A DNA stretch of 64,000 bases from Lepidodermella squamata. Its lineage: Eukaryota; Animalia; Gastrotricha. Below are positions 15,915 to 21,854 of this stretch, in pieces. Under the pieces are notes generated by a model. That model ran no database searches and was not told the origin of the DNA. It was given only the letters and a program-made list of their open reading frames with translations. The position numbers and the translations under genes were made by a program. The stretch covers positions 372,001-436,000 of the forward strand of contig JBLDXI010000028.1 of assembly GCA_047495785.1 (NCBI GenBank). The letters are read 5' to 3'. Position 1 is the first letter of the stretch; each line of letters begins with the position of its first letter.

Positions 15915-21854
<5,940 letters not shown>

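What the first reader, a model, noticed from the sequence alone, without database searches (positions are those of the whole stretch)
21480..21485. SMC3 carries a natural Lys-to-Gln (acetyl-mimic) change at the cohesion acetylation site
Seen: the head domain reads [15 protein letters not shown] (codons AAG CAG), and the nearby KQGKI motif reads KQGQI. Known: SMC3 has a conserved GAKKDQY/GLKKD pair (human K105/K106, yeast K112/K113) acetylated by Eco1/ESCO to block Wapl-dependent release, and K-to-Q is the standard laboratory acetyl mimic. Inference: this cohesin may be hard-wired in a partly acetylated-like state, implying altered ESCO/WAPL/PDS5/sororin regulation, or it may be a specialised (e.g. 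meiotic) paralogue. The ATPase motifs are intact.
Basis: partly seen in the sequence, partly recalled or inferred. Interest (0 to 1): 0.75.

Follow-up and report, generated by a model that had tools for sequence, protein, structure and literature searches.

The report
Natural Lys-to-Gln in cohesin SMC3
The only type of SMC3 (cohesin ring) gene in this small freshwater animal, probably the gastrotrich Lepidodermella squamata, really carries glutamine in place of the second of the two lysines that other animals acetylate to lock cohesin on DNA. The change is old and rare but not unique, and its effect on cohesin control is untested.

Summary
On the minus strand, codons AAG CAG (21485-21480) align without ambiguity to human SMC3 K105/K106, so K106 is Gln. 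The nearby KQGKI motif reads KQGQI.

It is not a base-call error. Both assembly copies, DNA contigs and independent spliced cDNA contigs of another strain all carry it. It is not a paralogue either: the genome holds one SMC3 protein, encoded twice, with 62 synonymous and 0 non-synonymous codon differences between the copies.

The change is old. Two related environmental species have Lys-Gln (a different Gln codon) and Lys-His.

It is rare. Lys-Lys stands in 119 of 120 and 104 of 112 mostly animal homologues, and in 128 of 146 eukaryote-wide cluster representatives. Other exceptions are Meloidogyne (KN), two choanoflagellates, Andalucia and Cyanidiales.

ESCO, WAPL, PDS5 and NIPBL (salt-bridge Glu kept) are all present, so loss of the pathway is not supported. 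HDAC8 and sororin were not detected.

One new lead emerged. SMC1 has Ile where 119 other animals have Val. This is the position where yeast smc1-T1117I is the one robust suppressor of lethal smc3-K113Q. Chance is not excluded (about 0.1-0.2).

The function is untested.

The parts
21722..21851 (-). SMC3 exon 1 (ATG at 21851; Walker A GRNGSGKS at 21735-21758)
   Evidence: ORF and homology to the human SMC3 N-terminus; GT..AG intron 21671-21721; cDNA contig reaches 21810
19820..21670 (-). SMC3 exon 2: rest of the N-terminal head half, coiled coil and hinge
   Evidence: Human SMC3 in PDB at E 8e-72; Pfam SMC_hinge 97 bits; cDNA joint 19368/19818
21480..21485 (-). Codons AAG CAG = Lys106-Gln107 of this protein = human K105/K106, yeast K112/K113
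   Evidence: unchanged in DNA and cDNA contigs and in the second genomic copy
21369..21371 (-). CAA = Gln144 in KQGQI (human K143), two residues after the Q-loop Gln
   Evidence: K/R in 137 of 146 representatives, Q in all three members of this clade
19066..19370 (-). SMC3 exon 3
   Evidence: cDNA joints 19368/19818 and 18544/19066 with CT..AC ends; GT..AG
18209..18544 (-). SMC3 exon 4
   Evidence: cDNA joints; frame kept
16936..17466 (-). SMC3 exon 5
   Evidence: cDNA joints 17464/18207 and 16500/16934
15915..16502 (-). SMC3 exon 6: C-terminal head half (signature LSGGQ 16236-16250, Walker B 16155-16178), stop included
   Evidence: Pfam SMC_N 100.6 bits

Best explanation
This is the single, expressed, strongly constrained SMC3 orthologue of a gastrotrich (probably Lepidodermella squamata). 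In its lineage the second acetyl-acceptor lysine of the KKD loop was lost long ago (Gln here, Gln or His in relatives). In other species that lysine touches DNA and an acidic patch of the loader NIPBL/Scc2, and acetylation neutralises it. Inferred: cohesin here runs with that contact permanently uncharged and with only one acetylatable lysine (the K105 equivalent) left for ESCO. The ESCO, WAPL, PDS5 and NIPBL machinery is retained. The loss is tolerated because animal cohesin is less dependent on this lysine than budding-yeast cohesin, and possibly because SMC1 carries Ile at the yeast T1117-equivalent position, which in yeast restores function to smc3-K113Q. Shown: the sequence, its reality, age, rarity, selection, and presence of the regulators. 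Inferred: every statement about activity.
For: Identity and site. Real and transcribed: with four introns removed in cDNA contigs and no difference at the codons. One protein from two loci with 62 synonymous and 0 non-synonymous differences. Old: P0001 (90% identical over the 190-aa head piece; environmental) has AAA CAA, and P0222 (82%) has AAG CAT. Rare: KK in 119 of 120, 128 of 146, 55 of 61 and 104 of 112. The head is otherwise conservative: only 5 of 70 near-invariant columns differ, and K to Q is the only charge change. Regulators are present. The NIPBL Glu equivalent to E1899 is kept. SMC1 has Ile at the T1117-equivalent site versus Val in 119 animals, and the relative from the same metagenome sample shares it. 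The yeast register is fixed by the oligo sequences in the supplement of PMC10153460. Role of the lysine: PMC10153460, bioRxiv 10.1101/2020.04.21.052944, PMC7492086.
Against: No biochemical or genetic data exist for this animal. His in a relative shows Gln as such is not required. In DT40 cells QQ, RR and AA SMC3 support viability and cohesion like wild type (PMC5749162), so the change may have little effect. The SMC1 Val-to-Ile change is conservative and lies in a locally diverged stretch. This SMC1 deviates at 21 of 110 near-invariant columns of that domain, so coincidence has odds of roughly 0.1-0.2. It also represents one evolutionary event only. The 119 Val sequences are the most similar, slowly evolving animals.
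Confidence: 0.55

Rival explanations
1. Nearly neutral drift. In animals one lysine (K105) suffices or the pair is dispensable, so K106 could be replaced by any small polar residue with no regulatory consequence. The SMC1 Ile is then coincidence.
For: QQ, RR and AA SMC3 are tolerated in DT40 cells, and QQ is not lethal in S. pombe or human cells. Gln or His occurs in the clade. About 12% of eukaryote-wide representatives lack one of the two lysines, and KR occurs in Owenia and an Aphelenchoides record. SMC1 deviates at 19% of near-invariant columns.
Against: The site is KK in nearly all animals sampled, including fast-evolving flatworms, rotifers and most nematodes. That is hard to square with neutrality. 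It is the only charge-changing departure among 70 near-invariant head columns here.
Confidence: 0.3
2. True constitutive acetyl-mimic. Cohesin is hard-wired against WAPL release, making ESCO-dependent acetylation (and its removal) dispensable.
For: Gln is the standard laboratory mimic. smc3 K112Q K113Q blocks release of the kleisin N-terminus as strongly as wpl1 deletion (PMC4769318). No HDAC8-type deacetylase was found.
Against: The ESCO gene is retained with zinc finger and acetyltransferase motifs, and WAPL and PDS5 are retained. The first lysine is kept in all three clade members. His occurs in a relative. In yeast K113Q alone gives almost no cohesion and is inviable (PMC3279399). QQ does not rescue esco1 esco2 cells. 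To my knowledge HDAC8 is absent from several invertebrates anyway.
Confidence: 0.1
3. Artefact (base-call or assembly error) or a specialised or decaying extra copy.
For: The assembly probably derives from amplified DNA of one individual (PMC11660948). Run X1 may be the assembly's own data.
Against: The same codons stand in two loci, in an independent 2015 cDNA data set and, as Gln or His, in two other species. There are zero non-synonymous differences between the copies. No other SMC3 is in the genome.
Confidence: 0.03

Closest known systems
Canonical animal SMC3 (human SMC3, PDB 6WG3/7W1M chain B)
   Same: Orthologue. The N-terminal head piece aligns end to end (E 8e-72). It has the same six-motif ATPase head, hinge and length class (1246 aa), and the first acetyl-acceptor lysine and the Asp of the KKD loop are kept.
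   Different: K106 is Gln and K143 is Gln, with a one-residue insertion just before the loop (QLNG versus V-IG).
Laboratory allele smc3-K113Q of budding yeast and its suppressor smc1-T1117I (Boardman et al. 2023, PMC10153460; Guacci and Koshland 2012, PMC3279399)
   Same: The same residue, the same replacement and even the same codon change (AAG to CAG, per the oligo table). SMC1 here carries Ile at the aligned T1117 position.
   Different: In yeast the allele is inviable alone and was made by hand. Here it is the fixed wild type. The animal baseline at the SMC1 site is already Val (the weak suppressor in yeast), so the natural step is Val to Ile, not Thr to Ile.
Other natural departures from KK
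   Same: Loss of the second lysine with the first kept: Meloidogyne enterolobii/incognita KN, Hartaetosiga balthica KN, Salpingoeca infusionum KG, Andalucia godoyi KS, one unnamed eukaryote KQ.
   Different: These are independent lineages with different replacement residues. None is described in a paper I found. Cyanidiales change the first lysine instead (QK).

Membership tests
SMC3 (cohesin subunit) | Split ABC-type head with Walker A, Q-loop, signature motif and Walker B | tested here: met
   [16 protein letters not shown] and FYLFDEVD located; Pfam SMC_N on both halves
SMC3 (cohesin subunit) | SMC hinge domain between long coiled coils | tested here: met
   PF06470 at 97.4 bits, residues 484-598 of exon 2
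SMC3 (cohesin subunit) | Closer to SMC3 than to any other SMC class | tested here: met
   Human SMC3 at E 8e-72 versus SMC2 and prokaryotic Smc at about 1e-13. SMC1, SMC2 and SMC4-type genes lie elsewhere in the genome.
SMC3 (cohesin subunit) | KKD loop with two adjacent acetyl-acceptor lysines (characteristic, not strictly defining) | tested here: not met
   Reads K-Q-D. The pair is KK in 88% of eukaryote-wide representatives.
ESCO/WAPL-regulated cohesin cycle | Eco1/ESCO acetyltransferase present | tested here: met
   G000 C3:3912588-3912722, PF13880 at 48 bits plus PF13878 zinc finger at 51 bits, split by an intron. Expression not tested.
ESCO/WAPL-regulated cohesin cycle | WAPL and PDS5 present | tested here: met
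   PF07814 on C99 and C84 with open frames of 475 and 436 aa; PF20168 at 364 bits on C21
ESCO/WAPL-regulated cohesin cycle | Loader NIPBL with the acidic patch that faces the lysines (human E1899) | tested here: met
   L014 exon reads GDEESIK against human NDEEGIK; numbering from the 1642-residue construct 1163-2804
ESCO/WAPL-regulated cohesin cycle | Sororin and an HDAC8/Hos1-type SMC3 deacetylase | tested here: inconclusive
   PF09666 gave no hit but rang nowhere, so it is uninformative. The PF00850 hits are HDAC1/2-like, HDAC3, two class II and three HDAC11-like, none HDAC8-like.
ESCO/WAPL-regulated cohesin cycle | Acetylation of the remaining lysine in S phase | not testable with these tools
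   Needs mass spectrometry or an acetyl-SMC3 antibody

The most novel reading that the evidence does not exclude
Nature has repeated the yeast suppressor genetics. In this gastrotrich clade the loader- and DNA-sensing lysine of SMC3 was replaced (the K113Q equivalent) and SMC1 was co-adapted by Val to Ile at the T1117-equivalent site next to the ATP-ribose lysine. This gives a cohesin whose ATPase is tuned constitutively rather than switched at that residue. A looser extension: the clearest animal cases of loss of the second lysine lie in lineages that to my knowledge reproduce by mitotic parthenogenesis (this gastrotrich and the Meloidogyne incognita group), so relaxed meiotic demands on cohesin may permit it.
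Probability: 0.2. Interest if true: 0.7.

Novelty: new variant of a known kind. Interest (0 to 1): 0.45.

Why it matters
The two SMC3 lysines are among the most studied regulatory residues of chromosome biology and are described as extremely conserved (PMC7492086). A wild-type animal cohesin fixed in the K113Q-like state gives a natural system to ask three things: what the second lysine is for, whether one lysine is enough for ESCO control, and how the ATPase is re-tuned. All regulators are still present, and a candidate compensating change sits at the very SMC1 residue found in an unbiased yeast screen. If the change proves neutral, that also matters. It would show that animal cohesin does not need this lysine, as the DT40 data suggest.

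Tried and rejected
1. Base-call error: rejected.

2. Meiotic or extra paralogue: rejected.

3. Loss of ESCO, WAPL, PDS5 or NIPBL: rejected.

4. Change of the NIPBL partner Glu: not seen.

5. Sororin: the Pfam search found nothing anywhere and is uninformative.

6. A scan of JGI metagenome contigs for more clade members found none closer than about 64%. It only added 61 more SMC3 loci, 55 of them KK.

7. I could not obtain SMC1 of the other lineages that lost the second lysine.

8. The other five yeast suppressor sites (smc1-A159T and N220K; smc3-E305K, V492G and R1199L) were not mapped. R1199 corresponds to Gly in human (G1188). From my own register the same Gly stands here, which is uninformative.

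9. The first SMC3 word search could see only proteins of 338-1075 aa. The library-wide HMMER search and the nematode-centred search cover full-length proteins.

10. The joined 1246-residue spliced model was not sent to any search tool. Searches were made exon by exon, by reference. The exons were joined only inside local scripts, to check the frame and count codon differences.

12. No complex or structure prediction was run, because no binding claim is made.

Full report
**What is there**

The finding lies in a minus-strand gene of six exons: 21851-21722, 21670-19820, 19370-19066, 18544-18209, 17466-16936 and 16502-15915. All introns are GT..AG, and the gene encodes 1246 residues.

Four of the five introns are removed in contigs of run X2. 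One of those contigs ends in the SMART cDNA adaptor, so X2 is cDNA and the gene is transcribed and spliced. The first 51-base intron is inferred from GT..AG, the reading frame and homology.

The N-terminal head piece matches human SMC3 at E 8e-72, against about 1e-13 for SMC2 or bacterial Smc. Pfam finds SMC_N on both head halves and the hinge. Walker A, Q-loop, signature and Walker B motifs are intact.

**The observation**

Window 21485-21480 reads AAG CAG. In the HMMER alignment G-A-K-Q-D-Q-Y lies against human G-A-K-K-D-Q-Y, so the Gln replaces K106 (yeast K113) and the first lysine, K105, is kept. KQGQI replaces KQGKI (human K143).

The codons are the same in several sources:
- a DNA contig of run X1 (which may be the assembly's own data);
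- a cDNA contig of run X2, from a different study and strain, which differs from the window mostly at third codon positions;
- the second genomic copy on contig C34.

All runs were contigs, so a rare allele cannot be excluded.

**Copies and selection**

A whole-genome search finds SMC3 twice, on C28 (this window) and C34, and no other SMC3-like gene. SMC1, SMC2 and SMC4-type genes are single.

The two loci are 96-98% identical, introns and flanks included. Their coding sequences differ at 62 codons, all synonymous. Whether they are diverged haplotypes or a recent duplication is open. Either way one protein is made and it is under strong purifying selection. The paralogue reading is refuted.

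**Organism**

Earlier notes of this scan name the gastrotrich Lepidodermella squamata. The published assembly of that species has 122 Mbp in 157 contigs (PMC11660948), close to the 121.2 Mb in 151 contigs held here. I treat the name as probable, not shown.

**Age**

The nearest relative, P0001, is 90% identical in the head piece. It comes from environmental assemblies ERZ23486764 and ERZ27332993 and has Lys-Gln with codons AAA CAA.

A second relative, P0222, is 82% identical and comes from run ERR12035936. It has Lys-His (AAG CAT).

Both also have Gln in the KQGQ motif and the one-residue insertion before the loop. The lysine was therefore lost in a common ancestor, and the replacement is not fixed as Gln.

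**Rarity**

Lys-Lys was counted in four samples:

| Sample | KK |
|---|---|
| Best word-search hits (mostly animals of many phyla, incl. rotifers, flatworms, nematodes, cnidarians; 338-1075 aa only) | 119 of 120 |
| Representatives of 50% clusters across eukaryotes | 128 of 146 |
| SMC3 loci from metagenomes | 55 of 61 |
| Nematode-centred set of mostly full-length proteins | 104 of 112 |

Named exceptions are:
- Meloidogyne enterolobii/incognita (KN), whose nearest relatives Globodera, Heterodera and Ditylenchus are KK;
- an Aphelenchoides avenae record and Owenia (KR);
- Hartaetosiga (KN), Salpingoeca infusionum (KG), Andalucia (KS) and Cyanidiales (QK).

Within this protein the head is conservative. 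Only 5 of 70 columns that are at least 95% conserved in animals differ, and K to Q is the only charge change.

**Regulators**

| Factor | Result |
|---|---|
| ESCO | zinc finger 51 bits; acetyltransferase domain split by an intron |
| WAPL | two loci with open frames |
| PDS5 | 364 bits |
| NIPBL | present |
| Sororin | no Pfam hit, but uninformative |
| HDAC8 | no HDAC8-like gene among seven HDAC loci |

The NIPBL glutamate that pairs with K106/K113 (human E1899; Boardman et al., PMC10153460) is kept: GDEESIK against NDEEGIK. To my knowledge HDAC8 is also missing in other invertebrates.

**What the residue does elsewhere**

- In S. pombe the second lysine contacts DNA in the gripping state, and the first faces an acidic loop of the loader (bioRxiv 10.1101/2020.04.21.052944).
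- In budding yeast both lysines face Scc2 819-EDEED-823 (PMC7492086).
- smc3-K113Q alone is inviable. It gives little cohesion and reduced loading (PMC3279399; PMC10153460).
- In chicken DT40 cells QQ, RR and AA variants support growth and cohesion (PMC5749162).
- QQ is not lethal in S. pombe or human cells.

**A new lead**

In an unbiased yeast screen smc1-T1117I was the only robust suppressor of smc3-K113Q, and T1117V was a weak one.

The oligo table of that paper gives the yeast sequence around T1117, which ends in ...YHA-T-PPLKRFKDMEYLSGGE. This fixes a gapless register with the animal sequence ...Y-x-x-V-APGKRFRPMDNLSGGE.

At that position 119 other animal SMC1 sequences have Val. This genome has Ile. 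The only other Ile is in P0273, which comes from the same metagenome sample as the Lys-Gln relative.

Caveats:
- Val to Ile is the mildest of changes.
- The neighbouring residues also differ.
- This SMC1 departs at 21 of 110 near-invariant columns of the domain.
- It is a single evolutionary event.
- The 119 sequences are the most similar, slowly evolving ones.

I put the chance of coincidence at 0.1-0.2 before any prior, and the probability of true compensation at about 0.2-0.3.

**Verdict**

The most likely reading is a lineage-specific loss of the second acceptor and sensor lysine in an otherwise canonical, ESCO/WAPL/PDS5/NIPBL-equipped cohesin. One lysine is left for acetylation, and buffering possibly comes from SMC1. 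A purely neutral change is the main rival.

No functional claim is shown. The joined spliced model was not searched; the exons were joined only in local scripts.

Noticed in passing
window 17722-18106 (intron 4 of SMC3): A dispersed repeat of about 385 bases with 15-nt terminal inverted repeats (MITE-like). Contig depth in run X1 jumps from about 70 to about 11,700 here. The genome search had 488 first-look candidates, with the 40 scored giving matches of mostly 72-82% identity. The copy at the same place in C34 is only 82% identical, although its flanks are 96-98%.
   Followed up: partly
window 14488-25054 versus G000 C34:1325122-1336055: The SMC3 region exists twice in an assembly that is otherwise mostly single-copy. 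The loci are 96-98% identical and collinear, with larger differences further out (87% and 77-80% blocks). They are either diverged haplotypes or a young segmental duplication. Synonymous divergence in SMC3 is about 62 of 1246 codons.
   Followed up: partly
Meloidogyne SMC3 (P0128, P0269, P0271, P0393, P0394): Root-knot nematodes of the M. incognita/enterolobii group have Lys-Asn at the acetyl-acceptor pair, while Globodera, Heterodera and Ditylenchus have Lys-Lys. To my knowledge these Meloidogyne and L. squamata both reproduce by mitotic parthenogenesis. Bdelloid rotifers, however, are Lys-Lys.
   Followed up: partly
window 23395-23652 and 24299-24706 (+ strand): Two neighbouring paralogous ORFs for small proteins. 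Each has a Cys-rich N-terminal part, one transmembrane helix followed by a run of 4-5 cysteines, and a shared C-terminal motif (E..RYDEIR.KYG / ETKYNEIRTKYG).
   Followed up: no
window 25484-25636 (- strand): A short ORF ending in a motif typical of the C-terminus of non-LTR retrotransposon reverse transcriptases (..LRYLGHIVR..), probably a retroelement fragment.
   Followed up: no
G000 C34:820754-821602 and C34:855008-855860; C54:2830655-2831507: Three HDAC11-like genes, two of them a close tandem-like pair 34 kb apart, and no HDAC8-like gene.
   Followed up: no
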